IMG/VR virus record: IMGVR_UViG_3300032516_000001
Span: 124,001 to 188,000 of that record
Strand: one strand, 5' to 3'
DNA length: 64,000 bases
Shown here: positions 18,219 through 61,882 of the stretch, piece by piece
How the letters are laid out: each line of letters begins with the position of its first letter
Numbering within the stretch: the stretch's first letter is position 1
Translations under genes and position numbers: made by a program
Notes under the pieces: generated by a model
Databases searched by the model: none
What the model saw: the letters and a program-made list of their open reading frames with translations, nothing else
Told to the model about the DNA's origin: nothing

Positions 18219-21200
18219 TTATATACGGATCCTTATCTGACTTGTATGAACCACGTACTCTAGGGGAAACACCGGGACATAGATGCACTCAGTTCTCATG
18301 ATCGTCGGATCATCTTCATCAACCGATGCCTTGATGCCGGCGACCTTGGCAACAATCTGCTGTTGAATCAGATTTTGGAACATGCCCAACAAGGCGGTTT
18401 CTGAAGACTTCAGAAGTTGTGGCGTGAACTTCTGCCCGATCATCGGATCGAGGACTTTACGGACCGTCTGTTGAACGAGTTGAATGGTCAAAATGACTGA
18501 CGGAGTCCGGGTGATGACCGAACTCATATTAGTCGTAAGACCATGCCGTACTCGCATCACAGTATCGACTTGCTCGATAACAGTGACACCACTAACAGCA
18601 GTCTGATTTGCTTCAGTCGGGTCAAGAACGCGTCCAAGTTTCTTGAACCCCAAGACTTGGCGACGAGTCAGTGGAACCGCCACGTCCGAAGCCGGATTTG
18701 TCAATATACCAGAAAGAGCTGCCGCCATGTAGGAGGCGTCAACCAACTGGTCAAAGACGTTGCCAAGATCGTCCTGGACGCTCATGACGTATCTATCAGG
18801 ATACGTGACGATCATCATCTCAGACTGGAGTGCAGTTGCGACGGTTCGCGCACCAGTCGGAGTTGTTCCGGCCGCTGTTCCAACGATTCCGATCCGCTCA
18901 CCTTGCTGCCGTGGTGCGCTCATGAAAACGCAATGCTGGTTCAGGTAAGCGAATATGTTTGGATCCGTTCCCAGTGGAACAATAATGTCGGGCTTGACAC
19001 TACCCTCAATCGGTCTCCTCTGTTCATCGATAGCCGCAGTGAACGACCCTACTGCAGCCTGACCGGAACCGGGGGCCTTCAGAACTTGTTTCATTCCAAG
19101 AAGCACTGCACCATTCAGCAAAGCCAAACGGGCTGCGAGCGCGAGCGGGAATTCAGGAGTTGGAGGACCGAAATTCTGCTGAATCTTCTTGAGATCCTGG
19201 AACAGTCCAGTGTCGAGATCCGTCTTTTGGTACTGGTAGCTGATATAATAAACGTCGCCAATTGCTGGTTCAGATCCACCCTTGTTAAAGGTCTGTACTA
19301 AAGCAGTCGAATCGACGTTGATATTCAATGTATTGAATACCGTCAATTCCAGACCTGGGATGCTCTTGGATGGGATCGCAGCGTCAGCCGTCCAAATTGA
19401 ACCCACAATTAACGTAAATTTCCCGGCGGTCGAATAGGTCCCGGCCGAAGCAGGAAGGATCGTGAATCGTAGACCAGTTACTGCATCTGTATAGGTCTGT
19501 CCAGGAACCCCGGTGCCAGATGACCCATTCGGATTGGACGATATGACCGTATACCCAGCCGTAGCAGCTTCACCAGAATCTCCGCTGGTGCCCACCACGA
19601 TTCCAAGACCAGTCTCTGGAATAAACGCAGTGTTAACAACAGCGGTGAATGCTATCGTCGAAGTCGTGCCAGTAGTTAACGAGCACATCTTGACGAATGA
19701 GCCGAGACCAGATACGAGAGCTGGCCAAGCAGCTGCTGCTGCTTTGAAGTTGGTGTCATTATTCAATGCACCGGCAACTGCATCAGCAGTCGGCTGCCAA
19801 CGTCCTACTGAATCACCAGAAGTGAATCCAAGAACGTCGAGAGCCGTGCTAGTGTTATTAATACCGACTAGCGAAGACACCGTATTGGTTCTCGATGTCA
19901 ACACCAATTTATTGATATTGAGACCGAGTCCAGTATGGGCTACGAGCTGCGAAATCGTCAATACTGATGTATTGACAGCATCCGCGATTAGATGGAATGC
20001 CAGACCTGCAATGTGCGCAGTGTACTTATCACGGATTTCAATCGCTAAAACGATAGCTGATTGAAGATCAGTAGCATCAGCTGCCGTTACGATATTTACC
20101 GTGTCAGGTCCAGTGGCAAAGGTGCTATGCCATGCACCACCAGTATTTGAAATGTGTCTATTGTACTTTGTTTTAATATCATTAACTAAAGTGATTAATG
20201 CAGGCAAAGCAGCTGCAGCTGCGGCTGTAACGTCATTGACGTTATCAAGTACGCCGTGGAATACCCCACCAACGCTCGAGTGGTGACCGGCACCAATAGT
20301 GCCATACTTGGTTCTGAGATCATTGGCCAACGCTATCGCATCAGCTAATAATGTCGCTGAATCAGCTGCCGGGCCATTATTGGCGTACGCAGCCTGGACA
20401 TAATCGGCGACTTGGTTCAATGTGATGGCGGGGCCAGCCGGAAGATACAGGCTGTAGTCTGTTCCATCGATATTGATACTGAAGAAATCGGTTACGCCAG
20501 CTTGGATGACGAATGGACCATCCTTAGTACCGACCAACGCCGCTGGATGATTCAGTGCGCTATACTGACCATAGGCAACTTGATTGGGCTGCAAACCAAC
20601 CTTAGCCGCAGCATTAGTCTGTCCAACCGTAGTGGGGGTTAGTACCTTTACATTCGAAGAATAACCATTGGTGGCGGTCTCCGTGTTACGACCAACGATC
20701 TTCAGGATTTCCTGAGTTCCGTAGGTCACAACAGTCGCCGGTACATAGCCACCAATCGGGTTGAATGCCGCAGTACCGTCTGGATGGACTTGGACATCCG
20801 CCCCTACTACAGCATTGATTGCAGCCGCCACTAAAGTCAAGGTGACAATACCCGTCATGGCGATCGGGGCCAGAATGACATCGTCGATTTGAAGGACTAG
20901 ATAGTCCGTCGTGGCGAAGGCCGTTGTTGGACTAACCGGCTGTCCAAGAAGATTGGCCGGGAATCCAGTGGTCATGTTCACCGAGAATGCCGCAGCACCA
21001 TCAACCTTCACACCACCAAACGAACGTGAAGCGGTGTAAAGATCGTATGGCTCAGCTCCCGGAGTCGTGAAACAGGCATGAGTCGCCGGAAGTAACGCCG
21101 AACTAAATTCGATTGTTACAGTTTCGGAAACGGGTGTGCCGCCATAATGGATGGCATCAGGAACAGTCTCTACGCCGGATGGCCACTGCACGATCTGCGG

Positions 21201-22922
21201 AAGAGCCGATTTCGTACCGAATCTAGTCTGGAACAACGGAGCATTGTTGTTCAACTCCGACGTAACGGTGAATTTCCCGATCCCGCTTGGGCCGGGGGTT
21301 ATCACCTTTAGTGTATAGGTATCGTCAACCAATCGGCTATACCAGAAAGTAGCATAGACCTTGGAATCAGCTGTCACCGCATTCTTGAGAGTAATAGTGT
21401 TAGTTGACGAGTCTACTCCCAATACTGCCACAGCAGGCCGTGAATAGGCATCTCGAAAACTGGTACCGACATAGACCGTCACAAGATCCGGCCGATTGGT
21501 CGGAAGATCAATACGGCTGTTGGTGACAGTCTGATAAAGTGACAATCCAAGTGGGGTGTCACGACCATTTCCGGTAGTCGGAGTTAATGGGAGAGTGAAT
21601 TTGGTAGCTGAAGCCGTGTTAGTTATCGGGTCAGTATAACGGGTAGCTTCGACACCGAAAATACGGTCATCAACTAACAGTCCGTAAATTTGTACTGAAT
21701 CGAATGAGACGGTTCCGGTTACCAGACCAGAACTGATCTGGAATGCCGACCCCCAATAGATCTTGGATTGATCACCTTCATTCACGACTGTGAAATCGGG
21801 ACCATTGAGATAATCCCTCCGACCTGGGGCTATACCAACATTCCCCATCGTGATTATGTTGCTATTGGGCAGATAGTCGAAGGTATCTTGCCAAGTATTG
21901 AAATAATATTGGATTGTTATCGTTGCCGTCTCAGCAGGAGCCGATGCTAAAGTAACAGTGCTATTGGCACCATCGACCCCTGATGGGATTACTTGAATCC
22001 CATTAACTAGAACGGTGACCTTTGATGTATCGGTGGTAGTAATTCCACCACCGGATCCATCAACGATAGGTCCATTAAATACGCGGAATGCCCGATTGCG
22101 ATTGGTGTAGTCACCAGGATTGAATCCAAATGCCCCATTGGCATTACCAGATCCAATGAGAATATTTCCATAAGCCATAAGCTGGATGTGATACAGACCC
22201 TGATTGTCAGTATCGACTGCAGCTGTAAGCCCGGCGATGGCCGCTAGATTCACATCATTTGCAATATCAGTAGCCGAACGTGTGCCAGAAGTTAATGTGA
22301 TCGCTACCGGCGCAGTCGAATCATCCAAGTAAACCTGGAGCGTATCACTAGTTCCAGTAACGATTGTATAGGTTTCGGCCTTCGGAGAAATCAGTATTGC
22401 CCGACCAACAGTAATCTGACTAGAAACATTATCCGTGACACGGGTGTCACCACGATGGAAAAAGTAATTAACCGATATCGCATCAGTTGGACTTGGAGGA
22501 ACAAGAAGAGTGATCAGACCATTTGCCCCGTCGACAGCCGCCACGACAACTGGTTCACCATTGACAGTGACAGATACCCTATTCGTTTCATACGTGGTTT
22601 TGCCAATCCCAGTTCCATCCACGATAGGATAATTACGAACCCTTAACTGGAACCGATTCCCATCCTGGAGTCCAATAGTAGGATTGGAGGCTGTGCCACC
22701 AGTGACCCAACGACCAGTTGGATCCTCACCAAATATGGGTGTATCGGCTACGCTGCTCGACCCACGAATCATCTCATAATCGGATTGAGTCAAACTTTCC
22801 TGACCCACCCCAATCAACAGTGGGACCCTGAGACCGTTCAGTAATTGGCCGACAACCGGCTCAATAACAGAGCGAGTGTAAACACCAGGAGGAGCATATG
22901 TAGTGAATGGTCCAATACCCAT
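18219..22922 (-). CDS. Contractile tail sheath protein with large insertion domains
   Basis: N-terminal YAPPGVY; C-terminal sheath signature (VTVIEQ..RVRHGLTT..IQLVQQTVR..IG.K..DPT....YVPVFPLEY); 1567 aa. Confidence 0.92.
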   Translation of the reverse strand: MGIGPFTTYAPPGVYTRSVIEPVVGQLLNGLRVPLLIGVGQESLTQSDYEMIRGSSSVADTPIFGEDPTGRWVTGGTASNPTIGLQDGNRFQLRVRNYPIVDGTGIGKTTYETNRVSVTVNGEPVVVAAVDGANGLITLLVPPSPTDAISVNYFFHRGDTRVTDNVSSQITVGRAILISPKAETYTIVTGTSDTLQVYLDDSTAPVAITLTSGTRSATDIANDVNLAAIAGLTAAVDTDNQGLYHIQLMAYGNILIGSGNANGAFGFNPGDYTNRNRAFRVFNGPIVDGSGGGITTTDTSKVTVLVNGIQVIPSGVDGANSTVTLASAPAETATITIQYYFNTWQDTFDYLPNSNIITMGNVGIAPGRRDYLNGPDFTVVNEGDQSKIYWGSAFQISSGLVTGTVSFDSVQIYGLLVDDRIFGVEATRYTDPITNTASATKFTLPLTPTTGNGRDTPLGLSLYQTVTNSRIDLPTNRPDLVTVYVGTSFRDAYSRPAVAVLGVDSSTNTITLKNAVTADSKVYATFWYSRLVDDTYTLKVITPGPSGIGKFTVTSELNNNAPLFQTRFGTKSALPQIVQWPSGVETVPDAIHYGGTPVSETVTIEFSSALLPATHACFTTPGAEPYDLYTASRSFGGVKVDGAAAFSVNMTTGFPANLLGQPVSPTTAFATTDYLVLQIDDVILAPIAMTGIVTLTLVAAAINAVVGADVQVHPDGTAAFNPIGGYVPATVVTYGTQEILKIVGRNTETATNGYSSNVKVLTPTTVGQTNAAAKVGLQPNQVAYGQYSALNHPAALVGTKDGPFVIQAGVTDFFSINIDGTDYSLYLPAGPAITLNQVADYVQAAYANNGPAADSATLLADAIALANDLRTKYGTIGAGHHSSVGGVFHGVLDNVNDVTAAAAAALPALITLVNDIKTKYNRHISNTGGAWHSTFATGPDTVNIVTAADATDLQSAIVLAIEIRDKYTAHIAGLAFHLIADAVNTSVLTISQLVAHTGLGLNINKLVLTSRTNTVSSLVGINNTSTALDVLGFTSGDSVGRWQPTADAVAGALNNDTNFKAAAAAWPALVSGLGSFVKMCSLTTGTTSTIAFTAVVNTAFIPETGLGIVVGTSGDSGEAATAGYTVISSNPNGSSGTGVPGQTYTDAVTGLRFTILPASAGTYSTAGKFTLIVGSIWTADAAIPSKSIPGLELTVFNTLNINVDSTALVQTFNKGGSEPAIGDVYYISYQYQKTDLDTGLFQDLKKIQQNFGPPTPEFPLALAARLALLNGAVLLGMKQVLKAPGSGQAAVGSFTAAIDEQRRPIEGSVKPDIIVPLGTDPNIFAYLNQHCVFMSAPRQQGERIGIVGTAAGTTPTGARTVATALQSEMMIVTYPDRYVMSVQDDLGNVFDQLVDASYMAAALSGILTNPASDVAVPLTRRQVLGFKKLGRVLDPTEANQTAVSGVTVIEQVDTVMRVRHGLTTNMSSVITRTPSVILTIQLVQQTVRKVLDPMIGQKFTPQLLKSSETALLGMFQNLIQQQIVAKVAGIKASVDEDDPTIMRTECIYVPVFPLEYVVHTSQIRIRI

Positions 22923-23064: not shown

Positions 23065-24396
23065 TTATTCTTGTGCGGCTTTATCTTTGATCCGCTTAAA
23101 AGTTGTAAGAGCTTTCTCTCTAATTTGCATAGTATTATTATCTGCTGGAACGGGTTTTCCCGTACTAGGATCTATTGACAATGCATGAGTTCCGGCCTGC
23201 CTGCGTATTTTAGCCCTTTCTACTCTATCCGCATCATATGCTTCCCATTTTCGATTGGCAGAACGACCAACAGCAATATCTAATGAAGGATTATCGTGTG
23301 AACCAGTACTCCTTCTAGGAATTGGACCAGATTCACCCATATTGTTAAATTTGAAATTTGTGGCAGAAGGTATCCTAGGTACCAACTTCCCACATTTTTT
23401 ACACGGATGTTTTTCGGAATATTGCTTTATATCATCTGATGAGAGCAACAACTCTTCAAACACTATACGACAGTCATTACATTGATATTCAATGATCGGC
23501 AAGGCCACTTCTCCTAATATACTATACTGATGATTTTTGAAGTTTTTTCTATGCCAATACTTCGACATATTCCGCGCATTCGTACAAATTTTGCACTCGA
23601 GAGAATCATTTCTACCTTTATGTTTATGGCGATAACAATCTGCAATGGGGATCAATCCGTGTTTTTTACATAATTTGTGTGTTTCAGTATAAGAAATAGA
23701 TTTGCTTCGGTAATTCGGATCCTGCCACAATATCTTTGCTGCAATAGAATTACTTATTCGTACTTTCTCACGATATTCCGGATTCTGCCACATCTTCAAA
23801 GTCGCATTGTGCATTTTCTCCTTGATTTCGGGTCGAGCAAAAGTTATCTTCTTGGTAGCTGTTGATTTAGCTATGGATTCCGGACTTGGGGGTTTTCCCA
23901 AACGTGCTTTAGCAATAACAACAGACATCTTTTCCCGGTATTCAGGATCTTGCCATAGTTTTTTCATTTCAGCAGATTTTTGTTCTGATGACATAAATAA
24001 ATAGTCTTTAAAATTGTCTAAGGATCGAGGCAGTGCCTTTTCACGATATTCCGGATTATTCCAGGGATTTTTATTTATATGTGGTTTGTGTTCACCACCC
24101 TTAGCCAAATTAAACCCGAACTGCGGATCTCTTGTATTGAAATGATTGATCCACTTCTCTTCAGCTAAATCGGCTGCTTCTAACGTATCGCAAATTTCTA
24201 GAATTCCATGAGTGAATGCGTCTTTCCCATATTTACGAATAGCATTCCAAAAATGGGCACAACCTCTGCCCCGCTTGTGTTTTGCATTCGCTATATGCTG
24301 ATTCCAACGCTTCATCATCGTTAATTTGGTTAACCCGATGTAACGACGTTGTGAATCAATATGTGTATGCGAATAAATCGTCCAGTGAAGTCCCAT
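23065..24396 (-). CDS. GIY-YIG homing endonuclease fused in frame to an FmdB-like Zn-ribbon protein
   Basis: WTIYSH..RRYIGLT..RWNQH..E GIY-YIG pattern; NUMOD-like repeats (KLWQDPEYREK); C-terminal (M)PIIEYQCNDC..FEEL..CKKCG. Confidence 0.75.
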   Translation of the reverse strand: MGLHWTIYSHTHIDSQRRYIGLTKLTMMKRWNQHIANAKHKRGRGCAHFWNAIRKYGKDAFTHGILEICDTLEAADLAEEKWINHFNTRDPQFGFNLAKGGEHKPHINKNPWNNPEYREKALPRSLDNFKDYLFMSSEQKSAEMKKLWQDPEYREKMSVVIAKARLGKPPSPESIAKSTATKKITFARPEIKEKMHNATLKMWQNPEYREKVRISNSIAAKILWQDPNYRSKSISYTETHKLCKKHGLIPIADCYRHKHKGRNDSLECKICTNARNMSKYWHRKNFKNHQYSILGEVALPIIEYQCNDCRIVFEELLLSSDDIKQYSEKHPCKKCGKLVPRIPSATNFKFNNMGESGPIPRRSTGSHDNPSLDIAVGRSANRKWEAYDADRVERAKIRRQAGTHALSIDPSTGKPVPADNNTMQIREKALTTFKRIKDKAAQE

Positions 24397-24441: not shown

Positions 24442-25653
24442 CTAAATCACTCTCTCGTAGCCAATGTCCTTTCCAATCACAATTGCCATTCCTGCAATTT
24501 GGGATGGGTCACTCATAACTTGTAATTGATCCCAAGTATATGAACCATCAAGGAACCCCTTTTGCTGTTCCTCAGTCTTAGATATAGGATCGACTTGTGT
24601 CGAAGTAATGGGTAATGGAATATAAATTTCCCAGTCCACTCTCATTGAAAGCGATATTGCTCCATCATAATAATATGCATCCAATGTTTCATTATATATT
24701 TCTTCGCTTTCTCCACCAGGCGCGACATCAATCAACTCGAGCCCTTCGAATCCCCAATAATTCTGTCGTTCCAATATTTTATTTACTACATAATCACTGA
24801 GTTTTTCACGATCTTCAGCATCTCTAGAAAATACTATCAAATCAAAGTGGACTTCGAATTTTCCACCATAAATATCCGCAACTTCGGTCCTGCTTTCGGT
24901 TACTACTATTTCGATTTCATCGCATTCCTGGATTCTATCCCCGAATGCGAGAACAGCGCCAGGAATTGCAGTTAGGTTAGTAGTTTCAGCTTTAAACTGA
25001 AATGGACCCTGATCTTCGATCTTATATCTGTAATCAGCATATATAACGGAATCAATTGGTGTAGGCTTTAGGAAGGTTATTCCTCCTGTACCATAATCAG
25101 CAGTATAATCAACACCATTCGATAGCGGATGCTTTCCATCTATCCACAATCTAATTGAACCCGGATAGATATTCTCTCTAGACAACTGCCCGGTTGGATC
25201 AGATGATGTAACGAATTGGATTACTGGTTCGTCTGTAACTGTTAGATTTGGCTCGAGTATGAATGTTCCAGGGATATTGTGTGGTTCATCAGGAAGAGAT
25301 GTGACTTTGAGTAAATAAACGCCGGGTGGACTAGGAAATATATTTCGAGTCGAAGATACCTTCTCTAGATATAACTGGTTCTCCTTAATCCATTCTAATG
25401 AAGTACCGAGATGATTTTTAGCTGGCAAGTGTACTACGAATGACTTTAATCTACCTATATAGTTATTTGCAGATAACCTAACTCTATCAGCTGAAGTTCC
25501 GTTTATGATAACCCCCCTTTGAGGTCTTTCCTCAAAAGAGAATTTATTCTTCACATTTTCAGAATCAGAACGATAGCGTGGATGCTCATAAAGTATTCTT
25601 TTGAGCTCCCATATTATTCTTTTCTTGGTAGCCGATGTAAGAGAATTTTTCAT
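24442..25653 (-). CDS. Probable tail-completion/neck structural protein
   Basis: 403 aa in the structural operon upstream of the sheath; contains an Ig-like beta insert (DYTADYGTGGITF..P..DSVIYADY). Confidence 0.5.
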   Translation of the reverse strand: MKNSLTSATKKRIIWELKRILYEHPRYRSDSENVKNKFSFEERPQRGVIINGTSADRVRLSANNYIGRLKSFVVHLPAKNHLGTSLEWIKENQLYLEKVSSTRNIFPSPPGVYLLKVTSLPDEPHNIPGTFILEPNLTVTDEPVIQFVTSSDPTGQLSRENIYPGSIRLWIDGKHPLSNGVDYTADYGTGGITFLKPTPIDSVIYADYRYKIEDQGPFQFKAETTNLTAIPGAVLAFGDRIQECDEIEIVVTESRTEVADIYGGKFEVHFDLIVFSRDAEDREKLSDYVVNKILERQNYWGFEGLELIDVAPGGESEEIYNETLDAYYYDGAISLSMRVDWEIYIPLPITSTQVDPISKTEEQQKGFLDGSYTWDQLQVMSDPSQIAGMAIVIGKDIGYERVI

Positions 25654-26012
25654 TTACCAGGGATAGCCCCAGCTTCTACTAAGCGTCTAGCTAGTTGAGC
25701 CTTGTTTCCAGTTACATCAAGCCCCGAATCCTGGGCTAATTTAATCAGCTCAGATTTCGTATATTGTTCAATAAATAAAGCGACAGCATCGGATTCAATC
25801 TCAGTTTCTCCATCTATAGATATAACCGGCACGTCAATCGCTGGCGGTGGAAACGGTGGAGGTGGCGGCATTACCGGCACTACCAAAGGAGGAGGCACTA
25901 CTGGAGGTTGTGGAGAAGGTAGTGTGGGAGACGCTGCTGGGATTTCAGCAAACTTCATTCCGTACGAATGCTCTAGCACATCGTTTTCGGTTAATAGAAC
26001 TTTCCGTTTCAT
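25650..26012 (-). CDS. Pro-rich protein with a C-terminal SAP-like DNA-binding motif
   Basis: Poly-Pro linker; YTKSELIKLAQDSGLDVTGNKAQLARRL fits the SAP pattern. Confidence 0.7.
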   Translation of the reverse strand: MKRKVLLTENDVLEHSYGMKFAEIPAASPTLPSPQPPVVPPPLVVPVMPPPPPFPPPAIDVPVISIDGETEIESDAVALFIEQYTKSELIKLAQDSGLDVTGNKAQLARRLVEAGAIPGK

Positions 26013-26038
26013 GTTTACACCATCCGATTAAAAGCTGG

Positions 26039-27049
26039 TTAGTCATTAGGCATTTGTGACAACAAAAGAAGGCCAGTGGCTACGGCTGTTATCGGATCTT
26101 TAGCAGGCCTAATATCCGATATTTGAATCGGGAATTTATCTTTATACACATTAAATCTAGATTCAAATTTATCTACGAAACCAGCGGCCAATGAAGTTCC
26201 GCCACTTATGATTATTGGTATGGATTGAGGAACATGGATGGTATCTTTAACTTTAGCAAAATGCTTGATTATATTTTCGATTGAATAATCAATCAGACCT
26301 TGAATAAAAACTGCCAATGCTTCGACTTCACGAGATTTAGGACTGTTTATATCGGCTCCACTTTCTTTGATAGCACACATTTTAGCGGCCGTGGTATTTA
26401 CAGCCTTGGCCGCATGAATATCTATCCAGTCCCCGCCTCTGGTCAAAGAGAATTCAAGCGCATTCATCGCATTATATGATAAACAAATGTTGGTCATACC
26501 GCTTCCGAATGATATCCCAATACCAGAAAAATCTGGTATGCATTCAGAGAATATGATAGCCTGTCCTTCATTGTGAGGAGACGCATCATATCCGTTCTCT
26601 GTAATAATTTTCTTTAAGATAGCAGTATGATATGCATTAGTGGAATCAGGAACATCAATAGCCGGGGCAGGAACAGAGAAACAGCATTTTTCATTCTCAA
26701 TCTGCGGCTTACCAAGAATTTGTTGTAATATTAGAGCTATTACTTGTTGAGCATCAATTTCCCCAGGAGATATCATGCCTTTAGACAAAGGACGACGAGC
26801 TTCTCTATTAAAAAGATTAGCCGTCTCCATCGCTTCATCACCAATAATCAGTAATCTGCCATCAAATTCTACATAACTCTTCTTAGACAGTCTTAAGAGT
26901 CGTTTGTTCTCGAGCGGAAGATCGATAAAAGCGTCCCTAATCCTAATAGTCTTTACATTACCCTTGCTAGTCTCACGGGCAGAAACTATGTTCATCGTGC
27001 CGAGATCCAGCCCAACACCAAAGGTGTCATTTTCCTCAATAGTCATCAT
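26039..27049 (-). CDS. Actin-like ATPase (MreB/ParM/FtsA superfamily)
   Basis: Phosphate-1 GLDLGTMNIV, phosphate-2 GISFGSGMTN, adenosine ISGGTSL, connect-2 PITAVATG; ATG at 27049 overlaps the HNH stop (ATGA). Confidence 0.85.
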   Translation of the reverse strand: MMTIEENDTFGVGLDLGTMNIVSARETSKGNVKTIRIRDAFIDLPLENKRLLRLSKKSYVEFDGRLLIIGDEAMETANLFNREARRPLSKGMISPGEIDAQQVIALILQQILGKPQIENEKCCFSVPAPAIDVPDSTNAYHTAILKKIITENGYDASPHNEGQAIIFSECIPDFSGIGISFGSGMTNICLSYNAMNALEFSLTRGGDWIDIHAAKAVNTTAAKMCAIKESGADINSPKSREVEALAVFIQGLIDYSIENIIKHFAKVKDTIHVPQSIPIIISGGTSLAAGFVDKFESRFNVYKDKFPIQISDIRPAKDPITAVATGLLLLSQMPND

Positions 27050-27942
27050 GCGGCCTTTCGACGTTCTACTGTGCGACTTACGTGACACCAACAGCATACG
27101 ACTTCGCATTTATTCAACTCCACCATAATTCTGGACAAACTAGCCTGACTACCAATTAGATTAGAAACATTATCAAGTTTTTCATCAATGTGATCCAGAT
27201 CCATTTGCCACGGATTGAACATGTTACCACAATCGATACATGGTTTACTTTTATACTGTCTTACTAAATCTAATCGTCTAGCTCGAAATCTAGCTAAACC
27301 AGCATAATGAATACATTTTTTACACCCCGGTTTATATACTGGTCTGTGCTCCTTACATGACGTTACATATTCAGATAGTCTATCATGTGATCTATTCCTA
27401 TGACATCCAACACAAACCAAATCACATTTTTCTAATTCATTTTTCAATTTTTCAAGACTAGCAGTTGGATGATTAACTAATCTATATATATCATATATCT
27501 TATCAGTACGATGATCAAATGTCATAGCTTCTTTCTGATATACATGACCACAATCAATACAAGGATTTGATTTTATTAAAGAAACATATGCACGTTTGGC
27601 TTCCCGACAAGAAGATCTTTTTATAGAAAGTTTTTCGGCATTGGTAGCTCTGTAATTAGAATTATATAAACTTCTACACCTCTTACACATTCCCTTATTG
27701 AATTCAGTAATGTGTTTTTCTTGATTACACAAACTACATTTCTTATGATTGATATCACACCCATGCTTTAATTCATGGATTTCTATTCGTTTTTGTTCCC
27801 TTAACCCTAAGATATCACGTGATTTCCAACTATTGCAATTACATCTATGACGTTTTAAAGTCGATAGTGAACTCGCAACATAACCGCATATACACATTAA
27901 ACCAATCATATTATTTATCCTTAATTTCTTATCTTGTATCAA
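27046..27942 (-). CDS. Double-HNH homing-endonuclease-like protein
   Basis: CIDCG..MTFDH..KCDLVCVGCHR and CIDCG..MDLDH..KCEVVCCWCH. Confidence 0.78.
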   Translation of the reverse strand: MIQDKKLRINNMIGLMCICGYVASSLSTLKRHRCNCNSWKSRDILGLREQKRIEIHELKHGCDINHKKCSLCNQEKHITEFNKGMCKRCRSLYNSNYRATNAEKLSIKRSSCREAKRAYVSLIKSNPCIDCGHVYQKEAMTFDHRTDKIYDIYRLVNHPTASLEKLKNELEKCDLVCVGCHRNRSHDRLSEYVTSCKEHRPVYKPGCKKCIHYAGLARFRARRLDLVRQYKSKPCIDCGNMFNPWQMDLDHIDEKLDNVSNLIGSQASLSRIMVELNKCEVVCCWCHVSRTVERRKAA

Positions 27943-27943
27943 A

Positions 27944-28459
27944 TTACTTTACTGTTGATCTCAATTTCTTCAAAGCCTCTACTCCCTTACTTAAATCATT
28001 CTTGAATATTTTACCCTCACGCAACTTGATATCAGTTTCAGCTTTGTCGGGGGTTATCTTGGATGGAATAAACATCGGTTCCGGCGTCTCATCCGAATGG
28101 TTTGAACGCTCTTGAATTATTATGTGCTTCTCAGTAATTGATTCAGACTTCGGCTTAGATTCAATTTTAAGTAGAATATTTGCCAGCAGTGATTTAATTT
28201 CGTCCATATCTTTATGAACATCATTCGGAATTTGTGAATTATGTGGTTCCGATTTAGGTTTGACAAATGGCCATATTGGCATGACGTTCATTTCTCGAAT
28301 TTTATCTATTCGAATTAAATCACAGTTAGCAATAAGATCCTTAGACCTATCAGCAGTATTGGCATCTACGATAGCACTGCTACCTTTTCCAGCTAAGCGA
28401 ATACTCAAATCCTCTATTATTACATCAGCATTAACTATGTTTGTGATCCTATATTTCAT
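27944..28459 (-). CDS. Hypothetical protein
   Basis: 171-aa ORF coupled to its neighbours in the operon. Confidence 0.6.
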   Translation of the reverse strand: MKYRITNIVNADVIIEDLSIRLAGKGSSAIVDANTADRSKDLIANCDLIRIDKIREMNVMPIWPFVKPKSEPHNSQIPNDVHKDMDEIKSLLANILLKIESKPKSESITEKHIIIQERSNHSDETPEPMFIPSKITPDKAETDIKLREGKIFKNDLSKGVEALKKLRSTVK

Positions 28460-29121
28460 TCTCCGGCGTACTCTGCGATTATCTCGCCCAATTTTGGAAC
28501 AAAAGTATTCATTATAACTTTATCTAACTGATCCATGAATTTATCGATTATCCCTTGATTATCACCTTGTGGAAGTTGGATTCCGGTTTTTGTTTTTTGG
28601 ACCATTCGTCTTGTAGACACCGACAATTTACCTTCACTCGTTATTCTAGCAGAACGCGGCATAGTAAGAGCAACTTCGTGCTCTAAAGTCCGAATTTCTG
28701 CGGTCTTCTTATGACTTTGTAACTTCTTTCTGGCATCGATAGCGGGCTTTCTGGCGTCCTTTGCAGGCTTATTTTTGCTGACTAACCGCCTAGGTCCATG
28801 GCTACCCCATCCATATGTACGAGCCCTTTCTTCTAATTTCTGCTTGGCTTGCTTTTCAGCCAATTTTTCTTTAGCTATGTCCTGTTCAGTAACTTGATCA
28901 GCTGGGACCATAGCGCCTTCATCTAATATGATTTCAAATTCAACAGTATTACCATATGCATGAGCGAATATTTCATAATTTTTGAGAAATTCTGAATTTG
29001 GAAACCCAGCTGTATCAAGCGTCCTTTTTAATGCGATTAACCCCTCTTTTGCTATGACATCGATCGATTCATCGACGGCTCTGTGCATGGCCGCCCATAA
29101 AGTAGTAGCAATATCATCCAT
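28456..29121 (-). CDS. Hypothetical protein (possible neck/tail-completion)
   Basis: 221-aa ORF between the head-closure-like gene and the actin module. Confidence 0.5.
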   Translation of the reverse strand: MDDIATTLWAAMHRAVDESIDVIAKEGLIALKRTLDTAGFPNSEFLKNYEIFAHAYGNTVEFEIILDEGAMVPADQVTEQDIAKEKLAEKQAKQKLEERARTYGWGSHGPRRLVSKNKPAKDARKPAIDARKKLQSHKKTAEIRTLEHEVALTMPRSARITSEGKLSVSTRRMVQKTKTGIQLPQGDNQGIIDKFMDQLDKVIMNTFVPKLGEIIAEYAGE

Positions 29122-29129
29122 AACTGCCG

Positions 29130-30455
29130 TTAGTAGATTATATTTTCGCCAGTCACACTGCTGCTTCGTAATTCACGCTCATCGGGAATATTCTTTTTCT
29201 CAGTCATCATCGGAGTGGCATCGCCTTCCCCGGGCTTGATGTAGCGCGTACGTGGGAACTCCATAAAATATGGATCCAGAATTGGAACCGTGTATCTGAT
29301 GTCAGGTTCGTCTAAATGGGATATTGTAAAGAATTGTTGTAATTGCATACCACGATTAGTCGGCATGCGTACCGGACCTAATCCGTATCTATCACCATTG
29401 AGTTTGACTATAAAATCTCTCTGTGAAAGCAAGGGAGTCGGAATAGTCCAGGTATCATAAGAATGTGTTAAAGATCTGCCTCTATTACTTTGGGCTATGC
29501 TACGTTCGGCATCATCGGGCGCAATTATAATATCGTATCCTCCATCGTAACCACCTATGATTCCGGTATTGAAGCAAGTGCGGCAGTCACTCTTTGCTTG
29601 TCCATGAGATTCCACGTAGCATCCACATTTTGGTCCAGATGTCTTGCGAATAAATACTTTTACGCGCTCTCCACCCTGATACAGAATCCAATGATTTCTA
29701 CGGATGGCTTCAGCCCAAATATAATCAAGCTTTTCGACTTCTTGACTATTAGTTTTGGCTGCTCGTTCTAATGGCGTTTCAATTAATTGCCGGTTCACAT
29801 CATCATATGCTACAGTAGTTAGCCGATAAAATACCCGCTTAGCTAAATTCGTTCTAACTTCATTCGTTACATATTTATACGTTGCCAAAACCACATCATT
29901 TGATGACTGTGGTAATACTGGTCCAACTGCCTTCTGTGATGCAACATCATAATATGGATAATTTCGTATCTCCACAGCTCCATCGACAGACCAAATTCTT
30001 TCAACAGGCGAATGCACCCCATTTACCGTGACCTGCACATTCAAATCCGTACAATTTGCAGCTCCAATAGATGGGTGTAATATTATTGGCTTGAATTTAG
30101 TACTGAAAATATATTTACCCTCTGGATCAGTCTCCGGCCCCATTTTAGTAAATGAATTAGATACATTTTCTTGGAGAGATAAAACCACTTGAGTCTTGTC
30201 TCTCCAAAACGTGGATCCAACCGGAATATTATTAATCCTGAACCATGGACCGAATTCTGAATCGAAACTTCGATAAATATTTACTCCGAGAACGTTGAAT
30301 TTAGCATTAGCAGATATTTGCCCCGGACATGTCCAACGTATATCTACAGTGCTCTTTTCTGGAACATAAGAAGATATATTGATTGGGGGATGTGGCGAAC
30401 AGGGGTAATCCTGCTCGAGTATGTGCGGATACCGATCTCGTGGTGCGGGAGACAT
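29130..30455 (-). CDS. Probable head-closure/neck protein
   Basis: C.C..C..CF.TG..GGY motif followed by DFIV..NGDRY, as seen in head-tail joining proteins; N-terminal FN3-like strands. Confidence 0.55.
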   Translation of the reverse strand: MSPAPRDRYPHILEQDYPCSPHPPINISSYVPEKSTVDIRWTCPGQISANAKFNVLGVNIYRSFDSEFGPWFRINNIPVGSTFWRDKTQVVLSLQENVSNSFTKMGPETDPEGKYIFSTKFKPIILHPSIGAANCTDLNVQVTVNGVHSPVERIWSVDGAVEIRNYPYYDVASQKAVGPVLPQSSNDVVLATYKYVTNEVRTNLAKRVFYRLTTVAYDDVNRQLIETPLERAAKTNSQEVEKLDYIWAEAIRRNHWILYQGGERVKVFIRKTSGPKCGCYVESHGQAKSDCRTCFNTGIIGGYDGGYDIIIAPDDAERSIAQSNRGRSLTHSYDTWTIPTPLLSQRDFIVKLNGDRYGLGPVRMPTNRGMQLQQFFTISHLDEPDIRYTVPILDPYFMEFPRTRYIKPGEGDATPMMTEKKNIPDERELRSSSVTGENIIY

Positions 30456-31204: not shown

Positions 31205-31495
31205 TTATTCATTCATAGTTATGTAGACTGTCCACAATGCCTTAAGTTCGTTTATAGCATTTCTAATCTCAGGGATATTTGGCATGTCTGGAGTTCCGAC
31301 CTCTATTATTTCTCCTAAGTGATCATCAAATATAAATTTGGATAACACTCTCCTACGATCATCCGCATGATATCTTATAAATAAATCGGCATGCTTATAT
31401 GTAGATTCAGGGTTCCCCTCCATAAGTTCAATAACATATAGACCGATAAATCTTCGCCAAACGTGCGGTTCGAATCTTTGGTGTCTAGTACACAT
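31205..31495 (-). CDS. Hypothetical protein
   Basis: 96-aa ORF overlapping the purB stop. Confidence 0.45.
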   Translation of the reverse strand: MCTRHQRFEPHVWRRFIGLYVIELMEGNPESTYKHADLFIRYHADDRRRVLSKFIFDDHLGEIIEVGTPDMPNIPEIRNAINELKALWTVYITMNE

Positions 31496-32801
31496 CTATA
31501 TCTTCGATGATTTTATCGACATGTCGTAGTGCATATTTGGTCGAACAACGAGATGCTAAATCATCTTTATTGAGTTTTCCGTCGGATATCAACTCACGTA
31601 CTTTAGAATGATTAAGTAATACCCCCAATAACTCTCCGATTTGGGTTTTCGATGCTTTTAATACCATCTCTTGAACTATGTCATGCGATTCTTTCCTCGT
31701 TAACCCAGTAGAAATTAGAGTTAACAATATGGTCTCACTACACCAGAAACGACTGTTCACTAGGTTATCTTCAATCTGCTTCTCATCTATCACAAGATTC
31801 TGAATTAGTTTAATAGTTCTATGCAGCATGAATCCAACAGTCGAAGTAATATCCGGAGCTATAAATCTTTCCACCGATGAATGGGATATGTCTCTTTCGT
31901 GCCAGAGTATGCAATTCTCCAAAGCCGGTGCAACTATGCCGCGCACATATCGAGAAAGCCCACAGAGATTTTCACTCAGGATAGGATTCTGTTTGTGGGG
32001 CATTGCACTCGAACCCTTTTGCCCCGACGCAAAACCTTCGTGAATTTCCGATACTTCACTGCGCTGTAGATGTCTAACATTAATGGCTAATCGTTCGATA
32101 GCAACCGCGATCAATGATAATGTCATGAAGAATGCAGCATATCTATCACGGGCGATGACTTGAGTAGATCCAATTGCTGGGTTGAGCCCTAACGTTTCTA
32201 GGGCTATACGTTCAATTTTAGGATCAAGATGGGCATAAGTACCAACAGCACCGGATAATTTACCGACCGCAAAATCTGTCTTAGTATTCTCCAATCTCAA
32301 TATATTGCGTTTGAATTCAGCCAAATGTCTAGCCAACATAAGCCCAAGAGTGATGGGTTCAGCATGCATTCCATGCGTTCTACCAATCATAGCAATATTG
32401 GATGTTTCTTTAATTTTGTATCTTAAAGCATCAACTATTCCATGGAGATAGTTATTGATTATCCGATACGAGTTCAATAATGCTATTGAGAATGATGTAT
32501 CGACTATATCACTGGACGTAAGACCGTAATGCAGCCATCTGGCATCAGGACCTACCTTTTCTTCTATATATTGAAGAAATGCAACAAGATCATGCTTAGT
32601 TGTTTCTTCTAATTGTTCAATTTTGGAAATATCTATGATTGATGGTAATTTTGATACAATTTTCTCGGAAGTTCCAACTGGCACAATTCCAGCTGCCTCC
32701 ATGGCTTCACAAGCCATTACCTCAACTGTTAACCAATTCTCATATTTAGTTTTTTGAGACCAAATTACATCAAATTCCGGTAGGGAATAGCGCGAAATCA
32801 T
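31485..32801 (-). CDS. purB: Adenylosuccinate lyase
   Basis: Fumarate-lyase signature GSSAMPHKQNP; TKHD, HYGLTSSD, GRTHGMHAEP, WHERDISHSSVER; 438 aa. Confidence 0.95.
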   Translation of the reverse strand: MISRYSLPEFDVIWSQKTKYENWLTVEVMACEAMEAAGIVPVGTSEKIVSKLPSIIDISKIEQLEETTKHDLVAFLQYIEEKVGPDARWLHYGLTSSDIVDTSFSIALLNSYRIINNYLHGIVDALRYKIKETSNIAMIGRTHGMHAEPITLGLMLARHLAEFKRNILRLENTKTDFAVGKLSGAVGTYAHLDPKIERIALETLGLNPAIGSTQVIARDRYAAFFMTLSLIAVAIERLAINVRHLQRSEVSEIHEGFASGQKGSSAMPHKQNPILSENLCGLSRYVRGIVAPALENCILWHERDISHSSVERFIAPDITSTVGFMLHRTIKLIQNLVIDEKQIEDNLVNSRFWCSETILLTLISTGLTRKESHDIVQEMVLKASKTQIGELLGVLLNHSKVRELISDGKLNKDDLASRCSTKYALRHVDKIIEDIDVY

Positions 32802-39243: not shown

Positions 39244-40818
39244 CTAAAATCGATAAATATATTTGATCTTAGCCGGAATTGCAATCTTGGTCAAACCAAG
39301 CTTATCAACGTACTCACGTTCTTTTAATTTCAAATTACAAGCCTTATCATAAACAGATTTTTTGTTTATTTCATTTCCATCTTTATCAACGTAAACATAA
39401 CTAGAAGTAGTTTGACCAACTTCTTCCCAATTACTTGCTTTATATATGGTACCAACATGTCCAAATCGTGGATCGGCAAACGAAACAAGACATTTAATTT
39501 CGGGAAAAGCGCTAGACACCTTCTTAATAACTCTAGACATGAGATAAGAAGCAAAATTCTTCTTATGATAACTGGGATCAATACAGAATCTGTCTAATTC
39601 CAAGACTTCGCCATGATTTAAATCAAGTGTATGCGCTATACCTTGTCTAACAGGAGTAGCGAATTTAATAACAGCAACAACTAGTTCTTGAATTTTGGCA
39701 ACAAATATAACTTTAGATGCTCGGCCAAATCCAGCATAATGATACTTATCCAAAAATTCGGTAACATCTGGAGAATGGAGTACTTGGGAAATAACTATAG
39801 AATCAAAAGAAAAATCGATAACATCAATATTTGATCTGTTATGATAACAAACCCCATTTCCAATATACTTACTATAATTACAATTCCAGCACAAAAGCTG
39901 ATATTTTGACATTAACGATGGCTTTTTAACTAATTTTTTGTAAAGATCGATTCCAGATCCTTCACCTATCTTTCTACATGCTGAACCATCATTGTATTTA
40001 TGATCCAAAGTTAACTTATAAAGATCCTTCTCTCCACAACATACGCATTTTCCACCCAATAATGTTAAACAACTCTGTCTGAATTTATCAGTTATTATTC
40101 TACGGCAAGGCAGACATCTATTACTGCCATGAGACAACTGTGATGGGAATTCGTTAACGTCTTTTTCTTTTAAACAAATATTACAAATTTTGGTTATACC
40201 TGATGAAATAACTACTTTTAACTGATGTATTGGGTTAATTCTATATTTCTTATTATTACAATTGTGGCACAATACCTGATAACGTGTTTTATCTGACTCA
40301 CCGTTTAAAATCCTACGTTTCCAACCAAGACTGCCAAAACTACGTTCAGTATTACCATCGTTATTTACATGATCTATTGTCAGAAACTCTTTAATATCTA
40401 AACCGCATGTAACGCATTTTTGACCCAATAAATCAAGAACTTGATTAATAATTGACTGTCTGTACACTCTATGACTTTCAACTACATGTTCAGCGTTATC
40501 ATCAGTCCATTTTTTTATTCTTACCCTAATCTTATCAAGATTTTTCAATCTGTATTCTGATTTATTCTTTAGTATTGCTGCACGATTTTCTTTATAATAT
40601 TCATGTTTATCATTCAAAATTTGATCATGATTATCAGCATACCATTTCTTCCTGATAACTTTTAACTTTTCACTATTTTCTATTTCATATATTTTATTAT
40701 GTTTCTTTCTACATTCCTTACACTTTGAGTCTTTCCCGTTTTTCTTAATTGTGTTATTAAAATACTCAGAAAGCAATTTTTCAACACCACATTTAACACA
40801 AATTTGTGTTGCATCCAT
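39244..40818 (-). CDS. Double-HNH endonuclease fused to a C-terminal Mom-like (GNAT) domain
   Basis: C..CG..LTIDHVNNDG..CHNCN and C.CCG..LTLDH.YNDG..CWNCN; then LDKYHY..KFATPVR..EVLELDRFCI..SFADP..GH.GTIYKASNW. Confidence 0.78.
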   Translation of the reverse strand: MDATQICVKCGVEKLLSEYFNNTIKKNGKDSKCKECRKKHNKIYEIENSEKLKVIRKKWYADNHDQILNDKHEYYKENRAAILKNKSEYRLKNLDKIRVRIKKWTDDNAEHVVESHRVYRQSIINQVLDLLGQKCVTCGLDIKEFLTIDHVNNDGNTERSFGSLGWKRRILNGESDKTRYQVLCHNCNNKKYRINPIHQLKVVISSGITKICNICLKEKDVNEFPSQLSHGSNRCLPCRRIITDKFRQSCLTLLGGKCVCCGEKDLYKLTLDHKYNDGSACRKIGEGSGIDLYKKLVKKPSLMSKYQLLCWNCNYSKYIGNGVCYHNRSNIDVIDFSFDSIVISQVLHSPDVTEFLDKYHYAGFGRASKVIFVAKIQELVVAVIKFATPVRQGIAHTLDLNHGEVLELDRFCIDPSYHKKNFASYLMSRVIKKVSSAFPEIKCLVSFADPRFGHVGTIYKASNWEEVGQTTSSYVYVDKDGNEINKKSVYDKACNLKLKEREYVDKLGLTKIAIPAKIKYIYRF

Positions 40819-41135: not shown

Positions 41136-42407
41136 TTAAACATTTACAGCCAAGAAATTTCGAACACGATCATCTAAAATTTGAAGATCATCCTTAAGTT
41201 CATGCTCCCATACAGTCAGACACTTTAGTCCAACCTCATTCCACTGATTGATAATCTTTCGCGCATGAACCTTGTTGCTTTCGCCAGTTTTATCTTTCCC
41301 GTGCCAATAATCACCAAGAATTTCAACGACATGAGTCACGCGTTTGAAAGATGGAGACCCGTCTTGTTTCGGATAAACAGGAAAACAAAAATCCGGATTT
41401 CGATTGTTCTGAACGGATGGAATAAGCTTCCAGAAACTCCCATTGCCAGAGAAACAAAAGAATGGGTATAACTTATTAAATGCCAACTCGGGCTTATTCG
41501 GACCAGCACGACGCGAATGCTCCAAATGCTTACGCGCATACTCCGGGTTCATCATCGGATGAGGCACACCATATTTCTTCATACATGTAGATCGGTACGA
41601 TTCTTCATTATGGGTCAAACTGTAAATCAAACGATTACTCTCAATGGACATAAATCGTCTTAGTGATTCATTCATCGATGATTTGGTCTTAGAGTCCTGA
41701 GTAGTCCACTCAACCCCGTAACGCACCAGATTAGTTTGTTTGATTTTTTCTTGGACTTCTGGCGCTTGCGCTGGGTCCGGTACACCGAATTGGGCGATAT
41801 TGGTTTGACGCCCCTTCTCACGAATTTCTGGAACTCGTAACGTTTGTTCATCACCATAACGCTCGAGATTGGTGGCGAGTTGTTTGGCCCTGATCTCAGG
41901 AACTTGAGACGGATTCTCTACACCGTATTTCTCAAGGTTTGTTTGACGAATCTTTTCCTTTATTTCGGGACGCGCAAAATTGTCCTTCGGGAGATGTGCG
42001 GTTCTATCTTTCCCGTCCCAATGTGATTGGACCTGTTTGTATAGAGTGGACTTCTTACAGAACACATTCTCGGCGCCATAACGTTCCGTTATTGTGGCCG
42101 CTTTCTTCTCAGCAGCACCCGGCACCATCAAAGCGTTTGTAACATCGTCCCCGTATTTCTTCTGGAATGTTGATTTGATCCGTTCAAGAGCAACGGCATT
42201 CTTATCTCTTGACTGCCAAGCCTGACAGTCTTTCCTATGGCGTTTCATCTGAGTCAGAGATGTGCTTTTATGACCGCAGAGACACGCTAACGGTTTTCTA
42301 TCTGGATTTGCTGCTAAAAACTCAGGGCACTTACGTTTATGTCCCGAAGTTACCGGCCTATCAAATTCTTTTCCACAGAATTCGCAATGAAAACTCACAA
42401 TCATCAT
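41136..42407 (-). CDS. Homing-endonuclease-like protein with KYGV..P repeats and a C-terminal Vsr/PD-(D/E)XK-like nuclease
   Basis: About 7 repeats of the (K/R)YG.EN..Q.PEI type; NPDF..VEILGDYWHG..CLTVWEHE. Confidence 0.75.
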   Translation of the reverse strand: MMIVSFHCEFCGKEFDRPVTSGHKRKCPEFLAANPDRKPLACLCGHKSTSLTQMKRHRKDCQAWQSRDKNAVALERIKSTFQKKYGDDVTNALMVPGAAEKKAATITERYGAENVFCKKSTLYKQVQSHWDGKDRTAHLPKDNFARPEIKEKIRQTNLEKYGVENPSQVPEIRAKQLATNLERYGDEQTLRVPEIREKGRQTNIAQFGVPDPAQAPEVQEKIKQTNLVRYGVEWTTQDSKTKSSMNESLRRFMSIESNRLIYSLTHNEESYRSTCMKKYGVPHPMMNPEYARKHLEHSRRAGPNKPELAFNKLYPFFCFSGNGSFWKLIPSVQNNRNPDFCFPVYPKQDGSPSFKRVTHVVEILGDYWHGKDKTGESNKVHARKIINQWNEVGLKCLTVWEHELKDDLQILDDRVRNFLAVNV

Positions 42408-52552: not shown

Positions 52553-53020
52553 TCAATACTTCTGTCGATTAGGGATCATGTCTTTTGTAATAAAACTAAC
52601 TCTTACCAAATCAGATTCATGGCTCTCGTGAGACCTAACATTCCTGGCCATAGTGATAAACGTAGTTTCTATCGGGAAATACATGGCATGTTCCATCATC
52701 GGTGGGGTGAAGAACATCTGTCCAGCCAAAAAAATCTGCGGTTTCGGTATTTCAATATCACCAATTTTTCTTTCAAAATATGTTATTCTACCTGATATTA
52801 TATATGCATAATGCATATCAGTTTTATGGTAGTGATTAGCACGGATAGTGTCGGCTTTACTAGTAATAACAGCTACGCTAGTAACCGGGCGTAAAATCAA
52901 ATTCTGTATAACTCCGGAGTCATTGATGAATGGCTGAGGTAATGGAACGAACCTTTCATTTGGCCAAATTCCACTATCTACGGCCGCAGTATATGCTTCG
53001 TGATCAATGCTACTGTTCAT
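52553..53020 (-). CDS. Cupin-fold sugar isomerase/epimerase-like protein
   Basis: RANHYHK..H....SG and PP...HA cupin motifs; located in the sugar cluster. Confidence 0.7.
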   Translation of the reverse strand: MNSSIDHEAYTAAVDSGIWPNERFVPLPQPFINDSGVIQNLILRPVTSVAVITSKADTIRANHYHKTDMHYAYIISGRITYFERKIGDIEIPKPQIFLAGQMFFTPPMMEHAMYFPIETTFITMARNVRSHESHESDLVRVSFITKDMIPNRQKY

Positions 53021-55113: not shown

Positions 55114-55122
55114 GATATACCT

Positions 55123-56085: not shown

Positions 56086-56093
56086 TTTATCAC

Positions 56094-57275: not shown

Positions 57276-57276
57276 T

Positions 57277-58584: not shown

Positions 58585-58586
58585 CT

Positions 58587-59333: not shown

Positions 59334-59347
59334 AGTCTACTATCCAA

Positions 59348-60436: not shown

Positions 60437-60457
60437 GTGATTACTATACTATACGAA

Positions 60458-61150: not shown

Positions 61151-61154
61151 GGAA

Positions 61155-61874: not shown

Positions 61875-61882
61875 ATGGCTAC

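What the first reader, a model, noticed from the sequence alone, without database searches (positions are those of the whole stretch)
25650..28459. Actin-family ATPase plus SAP-domain protein embedded in the virion-assembly operon
Seen: an intact actin-superfamily motif set (26039-27049), followed by a small protein with a poly-Pro linker and a SAP DNA-binding motif, preceded by a hypothetical gene, all among neck and tail genes. Established: some jumbo phages use a tubulin (PhuZ) spindle; ParM-type actins need a DNA-binding adaptor; poly-Pro tracts recruit actin regulators in eukaryotes. Inference: an actin-based positioning or trafficking system for phage DNA or capsids, with the SAP protein as adaptor.
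Basis: partly seen in the sequence, partly recalled or inferred. Interest (0 to 1): 0.62.

Follow-up and report, generated by a model that had tools for sequence, protein, structure and literature searches.

The report
Huge-phage actin gene beside tail genes
A clade of 400-600 kb phages carries one strongly conserved actin-type gene (volactin family) between its neck and tail genes; the neighbouring SAP-domain protein is real but is a lineage-specific add-on, not a shown adaptor.

Summary

The window is part of a 242 kb fragment of a huge phage. The actin is a single-copy gene in this clade (244 IMG/VR contigs, more than 2000 protein clusters). It always lies in the order p441-p221-p171-actin-terminator-Zn ribbon-sheath and is the slowest-evolving gene of that module. 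Five relatives of 427-619 kb, four of them rated 92-100% complete, have one such actin and no tubulin.

The phage actins form their own clade, sister to archaeal volactins and apart from MreB, FtsA and Hsp70.

The small protein is missing from half the clade. Its conserved part is a roughly 25-aa N-terminal motif. The ancestral C-terminus is a Lys/Arg tail, and SAP replaced it in one sub-lineage. No centromere-like repeats were found, and the one co-folding test gave no verdict.

My best reading is a late-expressed, filament-forming phage actin that organises virion assembly or DNA. Its mechanism is not shown. The kind is known, but this clade and its genomic setting appear undescribed.

The parts
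26039..27049 (-). Volactin-family actin ATPase (336 aa), single copy, core gene of the huge-phage clade
25650..26012 (-). Small disordered accessory protein (120 aa): conserved N-terminal motif of about 25 aa, Pro-rich linker, C-terminal SAP domain
   Evidence: SAP PF02037 at 24.7-26.6 bits. Alignment of 25 orthologues. SAP is present in 8 of them, a Lys/Arg tail in about 14, and neither in the rest.
27944..28459 (-). p171: conserved protein upstream of the actin, with a small N-terminal domain, a disordered linker, an invariant FIPS-type motif and a basic ALKKLRKK-type tail
   Evidence: Alignment with L002, L006 and L007. The motif is found upstream of the actin in nearly all loci of both clades. 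No family match.
27046..27942 (-). HNH homing endonuclease with two HNH units, a mobile insertion between p171 and the actin
   Evidence: phrog_2255 1.3e-32 and phrog_3106 8e-31. Absent at this site in most relatives. Contigs that skip it occur in two metagenomes.
24442..25653 (-). Tail terminator (neck 'gateway') protein with an inserted domain; its start overlaps the stop of the SAP gene by 4 nt
23065..24396 (-). GIY-YIG homing endonuclease read in frame with the module's FmdB-type Zn-ribbon protein
   Evidence: PF01541 1.9e-11, Zn_ribbon_8 and TIGR02605. Relatives have a free-standing Zn-ribbon gene of 143-147 aa here.
18219..22922 (-). Giant tail sheath protein (1567 aa)
   Evidence: Residues 1180-1567 resemble Phage_sheath_1/1C clusters at 0.92-0.94 by Atlas features. 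A homologue carries a faint PF17482 hit. Syntenic in almost all loci.
28456..29121 (-). p221, conserved module protein of unknown family
   Evidence: Synteny. No family or PDB match.
29130..30455 (-). p441, conserved module protein with weak hits to 'virion structural protein' PHROGs
   Evidence: phrog_38102 at 0.0011. phrog_1004 at 0.003 for the L007 homologue. Found at a 50% coverage threshold in 63 of 86 related loci.

Best explanation
The gene encodes a volactin-family actin that binds and hydrolyses ATP and most likely assembles into dynamic cytoplasmic filaments. It is a single-copy core gene of a clade of 400-600 kb tailed phages. It is packed into the neck/tail operon, so it is probably made late together with virion parts.

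I infer that the filaments organise late infection in a crowded cell. They could bring DNA, filled heads or tails to where they are joined, as PhuZ tubulin and the AlpC actin do in other phages.

The 120-aa protein after it is an accessory, fast-evolving disordered protein. Its N-terminal motif docks on an unknown partner. Its C-terminus, here SAP and ancestrally a Lys/Arg tail, binds a polyanion, probably DNA. It is not required by the actin across the clade.

The universally present upstream protein p171 is the better candidate for a general partner.

Shown: identity, fold, family placement, synteny and conservation. Inferred: polymerisation, timing, cargo and all contacts.
For: - Family and fold. 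The motif set is shared with archaeal volactins, which form dynamic filaments in vivo (PMC10869688).
- The tree places the phage clade beside archaeal volactins and apart from MreB, FtsA and DnaK.
- There are more than 2000 homologue clusters, many on 200-440 kb contigs, and 244 IMG/VR contigs.
- The gene order is fixed in about 80 loci.
- The actin is the best conserved gene of the module: median identity 62% against 57-58% in the near clade, and 51% against 35-44% in the far clade.
- Five large relatives (427-619 kb; four rated 92-100% complete) each have one copy and no tubulin.
- The genes are tightly packed or overlapping, with no promoter or terminator signal above shuffled controls.
- The neighbours are a tail terminator and a sheath.
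- The small protein's C-terminus is either SAP or a Lys/Arg tail.
- Precedent: the prophage actin AlpC with its adaptor AlpA (PMC4446434).
Against: - There are no expression data. Only DNA runs hold the locus.
- Polymerisation is untested.
- Gene position alone does not prove late expression or a role in assembly.
- Actin systems that move DNA (ParMRC, AlpAC) are early or constitutive and have centromere repeats, which are absent here.
- No cultured phage carries this gene. Only two uncultured huge phages match, out of 50,697 phage records.
Confidence: 0.5

Rival explanations
1. This is a ParMRC/AlpAC-like system in which the SAP protein is the adaptor that ties phage DNA or capsids to actin filaments for positioning.
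For: - An actin and a putative DNA-binding protein are adjacent and co-oriented.
- The small protein has a conserved N-terminal motif that could dock on the actin.
- Where SAP is missing, the C-terminus is mostly a Lys/Arg tail, so polyanion binding seems to be maintained.
Against: - The small protein is absent from the whole sister clade and from L028, while the actin persists.
- SAP is derived and lineage-specific.
- There are no iterated repeats or other centromere candidates near the locus.
- The actin has no ParM-family match in Pfam.
- The poly-Pro tract is not conserved.
Confidence: 0.15
2. The actin-fold protein does not form a cytoskeleton. It is an ATP-driven assembly factor for the neck or tail, or a protein carried in the virion and delivered to the next host. 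That would explain why its gene sits between the head-completion and tail-terminator genes.
For: - Invariant position inside the neck/tail module in about 80 loci.
- Co-conservation with p441, the terminator and the sheath.
Against: - It lacks any substrate-binding or extra domain. It is 336 aa, the bare actin core.
- Its nearest relatives by sequence are archaeal volactins, which form filaments (PMC10869688).
- No precedent for such a role is known to me.
Confidence: 0.15
3. The phage actin acts on the host cell. It replaces or perturbs the host's shape or division machinery, for example to enlarge or reshape the cell for very large virions, in line with volactin's role in cell shape.
For: Family kinship with volactin, a cell-shape factor. 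Fold similarity to MreB.
Against: - MreB_Mbl scores only 15 bits.
- No N-terminal amphipathic helix or other membrane-binding part was seen in the alignments.
- Linkage to neck/tail genes is not expected for a host-takeover gene.
Confidence: 0.1
4. The SAP/Lys-Arg-tail protein has nothing to do with the actin. It is a neck- or portal-associated protein that holds the packaged DNA end, docking through its N-terminal motif on the tail terminator whose gene it overlaps.
For: - Its stop overlaps the start of the terminator gene by 4 nt.
- In L029-L031 and L033 an endonuclease separates it from the actin but not from the terminator.
- It has a DNA-binding-type C-terminus.
Against: - In L032 and L020 an endonuclease separates it from the terminator instead.
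- A long acidic low-complexity linker is unusual for a channel protein.
- It is absent in half of the clade, although the terminator is universal.
Confidence: 0.2

Closest known systems
Volactin of Haloferax volcanii and other archaea (Pfam PF25216)
   Same: Passes the family model (222 bits against a cut-off of 35). Has the same motif set, including Ser in phosphate 2 and the short IIB region. Is the sister group in the tree.
   Different: Archaeal members score about 400 bits and phage members 220-260. The phage proteins form a separate clade. They are encoded by tailed phages inside a neck/tail operon rather than in a cellular genome. A cell-shape role is unlikely.
AlpC/AlpA of the Corynebacterium prophage CGP3 (PMC4446434)
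   Same: A phage-encoded actin with small neighbouring genes that could act as adaptors. The proposed role is spatial organisation of the infection.
   Different: AlpAC are early genes and AlpA binds a defined site. Here the gene lies among late structural genes, no binding site was found, and the candidate adaptor is not universal. No sequence kinship was shown.
PhuZ/TubZ tubulin spindles of jumbo phages
   Same: A phage-encoded cytoskeletal NTPase in very large phages. The relatives studied here have the actin and no tubulin.
   Different: A different protein superfamily. No evidence here of a phage nucleus or of centring.
MamK, MreB and BeeR (bacterial actins)
   Different: Only 15-21% identity. 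MreB_Mbl scores 15 bits and NCBIfam MamK 21 bits, against cut-offs of 27 and 400. They fall in separate clades.
Gp506 of Bacillus phage G
   Same: The best viral structural match in BFVD, another actin-fold protein of a giant phage.
   Different: 13% identity and TM 0.57, so not the same family.

Membership tests
Volactin family (PF25216), actin fold | Score above the curated family threshold | tested here: met
   222 bits against a cut-off of 35, covering model positions 3-318 of 321.
Volactin family (PF25216), actin fold | Four-subdomain actin fold with the five nucleotide-binding motifs | tested here: met
Volactin family (PF25216), actin fold | Groups with archaeal volactins rather than MreB, FtsA or Hsp70 | tested here: met
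   The joint clade has SH-aLRT 95. The phage clade (99) is sister to the archaeal volactins, not nested in them. ParM, AlfA and MamK sequences were not in the tree.
Volactin family (PF25216), actin fold | ATP-dependent assembly into dynamic filaments | not testable with these tools
   Needs the purified protein or imaging.
ParMRC / AlpAC-type actin segregation system | Dedicated DNA-binding adaptor encoded next to the actin throughout the family | tested here: not met
   The small protein is absent in the sister clade and in L028. SAP occurs in only one sub-lineage.
ParMRC / AlpAC-type actin segregation system | Centromere-like repeated binding sites near the operon | tested here: not met
   Only short intragenic repeats were found. 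Intergenic space is minimal.
ParMRC / AlpAC-type actin segregation system | Adaptor binds the actin | tested here: inconclusive
   The one co-folding job gave no verdict (see Tried and rejected). It is no evidence either way.
SAP domain (PF02037) | Score above threshold and a conserved helix-loop-helix motif | tested here: met
   24.7 and 26.6 bits against a cut-off of 23.9. The motif is kept in 8 orthologues. DNA binding itself was not tested.
MreB/Mbl (PF06723) | Score above the family threshold | tested here: not met
   15.2 bits against a cut-off of 27. Separate clade.
Hsp70 / sugar kinases | Nests within these families, or carries a substrate-binding domain | tested here: not met
   No Pfam hit. 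The DnaK nucleotide-binding domain is the outgroup in the tree. The protein is the bare 336-aa actin core.
Tail terminator (gene 24442-25653) | Terminator fold as in lambda gpU or the myophage neck gateway | tested here: met

The most novel reading that the evidence does not exclude
The actin filament is itself part of the virion-morphogenesis machinery of these huge phages. It would be a cytoskeletal track or template for joining heads to very long, giant-sheathed tails, or a cargo delivered with the virion. The flanking disordered proteins, p171 and the SAP/Lys-Arg protein, would be its linkers. That would be the first cytoskeletal element dedicated to assembling a phage particle.
Probability: 0.2. 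Interest if true: 0.85.

Novelty: new variant of a known kind. Interest (0 to 1): 0.6.

Why it matters
Phage cytoskeletons are known from PhuZ/TubZ tubulins and a few plasmid-like actins. This is a large, environmentally widespread clade of 400-600 kb phages with a single, very conserved actin and no tubulin. The gene is fixed inside the neck/tail operon.

If it polymerises, cell-biological organisation of infection by huge phages would not be limited to the nucleus-forming Chimalliviridae. It would also give the volactin family, so far known from archaeal cell shape, a viral branch.

The paper library I could search does not describe it.

Tried and rejected
- **Co-folding.** I co-folded the actin with residues 1-45 of the small protein. 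The result was no answer, with a score of 0.00 against a mark of 0.32. It is not evidence for or against binding.
- **PDB by sequence.** Sequence and profile searches with the actin found nothing useful; the best was MreB at E 0.45. The sheath and p221 also gave nothing.
- **Family scans of neighbours.** Pfam, PHROGs and NCBIfam on p441, p221, p171 and the terminator gave no family, or only weak 'virion structural protein' hits.
- **Nucleotide search.** Megablast of 12 kb against the phage collection found no match.
- **Expression.** There are no RNA runs, only four sediment DNA metagenomes.
- **Signals and repeats.** Promoter and terminator scans were not above shuffled controls. Centromere-like repeats: none. 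tRNAs in the window: none.
- **Cellular origin.** I rejected this. The only 'genome' hits are short MAG contigs from unrelated phyla. Those checked (L009, L011) carry the same phage module, so they are probably phage DNA binned into those MAGs.
- **Hsp70 or sugar kinase.** I rejected this reading.
- **Gaps in the tree.** ParM, AlfA and MamK sequences could not be added because I had no referenced sequences. I relied on structure ranks, where ParM and AlfA are not among the 50 best rows. One row, L078, was a mis-extracted ORF with a very long branch.
- **Failed script.** A regex-based typing of the small proteins missed many of them. I replaced it with manual typing.
Full report
**What is there**

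All genes of the region lie on the minus strand and are tightly packed. In the direction of transcription the order is:
- p441 (29130-30455)
- p221 (28456-29121)
- p171 (27944-28459)
- an HNH endonuclease (27046-27942)
- the actin (26039-27049)
- a 120-aa protein (25650-26012)
- a 403-aa protein (24442-25653)
- a GIY-YIG endonuclease fused to a Zn ribbon (23065-24396)
- a 1567-aa protein (18219-22922)

The window is bases 124001-188000 of a 241,648-base IMG/VR virus record that CheckV rates 57% complete. It is therefore a fragment of a huge phage.

**The actin**

- It matches Pfam Volactin (PF25216) at 222 bits, E=1.2e-65. The next family, MreB_Mbl, reaches only 15 bits.
- NCBIfam gives only faint MamK and salactin matches, far below their cut-offs.
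- Neither the sequence nor a profile of it finds a solved structure.
- An AF2 model built on 33 homologues is confident, with pLDDT 89.8 and pTM 0.87.
- The motif set is complete. The Ser in phosphate 2, where MreB has Asp, is shared with archaeal volactins and so is a family trait rather than a defect.
- The start at 27049 overlaps the HNH stop codon.

**Family and phylogeny**

The word search found 2046 protein clusters at E<=1e-5. The best 120 all carry PF25216, are 59-87% identical, and many lie on 200-440 kb contigs. IMG/VR holds 244 contigs with a relative. Among 50,697 deposited phage records, only two uncultured huge phages match: LR745208 (485 kb, 49% identity) and LR756511 (595 kb, 28%). 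In GTDB genomes the only hits are short MAG contigs from unrelated phyla. Those checked (L009, L011) carry the same phage module.

Archaeal volactins from the phylum searched score about 400 bits on the Pfam model. The phage proteins score 220-260 bits.

I built a maximum-likelihood tree of 42 rows with the quick search. The phage proteins form one clade (SH-aLRT 99). That clade sits beside the archaeal volactins and three distant forms, in a group (95) separate from bacterial MreB, archaeal MreB-like proteins, FtsA and the DnaK nucleotide-binding domain.

**Context**

In about 80 related loci the order p441 - p221 - p171 - actin - (small protein) - 403-aa protein - Zn ribbon - giant protein is kept.
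- The C-terminal 390 residues of the giant protein resemble tail-sheath clusters by language-model features, at 0.92-0.94.

The actin is the slowest-evolving gene of the module:

| Clade | Actin, median identity | p441 | Terminator | Sheath |
|---|---|---|---|---|
| Near | 62% | 58% | 57% | 57% |
| Far | 51% | 43% | 35% | 44% |

Five relatives of 427-619 kb each have exactly one such actin and no tubulin. Two of them have terminal repeats, and four are rated 92-100% complete. The held part of this genome has no tubulin or ParB either. Promoter and terminator scans are at background level.

**The small protein**

The SAP domain is real but marginal by score, and it is conserved in 8 orthologues.

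Across 25 orthologues the only conserved part is an N-terminal motif of about 25 residues. It is followed by a low-complexity linker of varying make-up: Pro, Pro/Ala, Pro/Glu or Glu/Ser. The C-terminus is SAP, a short Lys/Arg tail, or neither.

On an actin tree the small protein is absent from one deep clade, where the gap from the actin to the terminator is only 23-60 nt. It is present in the other deep clade. There the basal lineages have the Lys/Arg tail, and SAP marks one sub-clade that includes the window (SH-aLRT 92) with one reversion.

The actin therefore does not need this protein, and SAP is a late replacement of a basic tail. What is kept is a polyanion-binding end. No centromere-like repeats lie nearby.

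**p171**

This upstream protein has a small N-terminal domain, a long disordered linker, an almost invariant FIPS-type motif and a basic ALKKLRKK-type tail. It is found upstream of the actin in both clades, sometimes with one inserted gene between. It is the better candidate for a general partner of the actin. I could not test it.

**How it most likely works**

Shown: the protein is a volactin-type actin, single copy, under strong constraint, and fixed in a neck/tail operon of huge phages that lack tubulin.

Inferred: it polymerises with ATP as volactin does in vivo (PMC10869688), it is made late, and it organises the late steps of infection. The prophage actin AlpC with its adaptor AlpA (PMC4446434) and the PhuZ spindle are the functional precedents.

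The rivals are given separately: a ParMRC-like system with SAP as adaptor, a non-filament assembly factor or virion cargo, host shape takeover, and a small protein that belongs to the neck rather than to the actin.

**Novelty**

Phage actins and the volactin family are both known. This clade, its size and its fixed place among tail genes are not described in the library I could search. In BFVD the nearest viral fold is phage G Gp506, at 13% identity.

**Population data**

Four sediment metagenomes hold the locus as DNA. Contigs from three of them cover the actin-SAP junction without differences. In two runs a contig joins 26998 to 27944, skipping the HNH gene, and depth falls over the HNH gene in one run. 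So forms with and without HNH coexist.

**Side observation**

Two distant homologues, L013 and L014, are read through 20 TAG codons that fall mainly on alanine columns. Details are under Noticed in passing.

Noticed in passing
L013:2825-3826 (+) and L014:2913-3914 (+); MAG contigs DAOOQE010000051.1 and CAYRGR010000064.1, GC 23%: The volactin-like gene on these contigs has 20 in-frame TAG codons and only 5-6 GCN codons. Ten TAGs fall in alignment columns where Ala is the majority (8 of them at 27/32 or more). Four more fall where Ala is the second residue. Of 22 columns with at least 50% Ala, 10 are TAG and 1 is GCN. With TAG read as a sense codon the whole of L014 becomes tightly packed ORFs. 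This suggests TAG is read as Ala or another small residue, not Gln. I know of no such code in phages or bacteria; that is from memory. No tRNA lies on these short contigs.
   Followed up: partly
window 27046-27942 (-): An HNH homing endonuclease sits between p171 and the actin, its stop overlapping the actin start. Contigs in two sediment metagenomes join 26998 to 27944 without it, and depth drops over it in one run. Phage variants with and without HNH therefore coexist.
   Followed up: yes
window 23065-24396 (-): A GIY-YIG endonuclease is read in one frame with the module's FmdB-type Zn-ribbon protein, which stands alone (143-147 aa) in relatives. GIY-YIG and HNH genes sit at different places of this module in different relatives, for example between the actin and the small protein in L029-L033, and between p441 and p221 in L020, L021 and L044.
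   Followed up: partly
window 7125-8924, 39244-40818, 41136-42407 (-): Three further large homing-endonuclease genes of HNH or Mom-like type lie in the window. This genome is heavily colonised by such elements.
   Followed up: no
window 31485-32801 (-): An adenylosuccinate lyase gene (Lyase_1/ADSL_C) lies just upstream of the neck/tail module. It is kept there in two close relatives.
   Followed up: no
window 18219-22922 (-): The tail sheath is 1567 aa here and up to at least 1931 aa in relatives. Only its C-terminal part was tested and looks sheath-like, so most of the protein may be inserted domains.
   Followed up: partly
L011:6941-7282, L064:7977-8282, L067:5498-5896, L087:1438-1713 (+): In part of the far clade a different small ORF of 91-132 aa occupies the slot between the actin and the terminator. 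It has a shared C-terminal motif and is unrelated to the SAP/Lys-Arg protein.
   Followed up: no
window 53017-63889 (-): A run of sugar-metabolism genes lies here: two glycosyltransferases, a nucleotide-sugar epimerase, a UDP-glucose dehydrogenase and methyltransferases.
   Followed up: no
L007:6618-6971, L017:6617-6922, L023:6614-6967, L027:6572-6949, L040:1670-2008 (+): In several relatives an extra conserved gene of 101-125 aa is inserted between p171 and the actin. In the far clade a gene of about 220 aa, with a conserved motif near its C-terminus, often takes that place.
   Followed up: no
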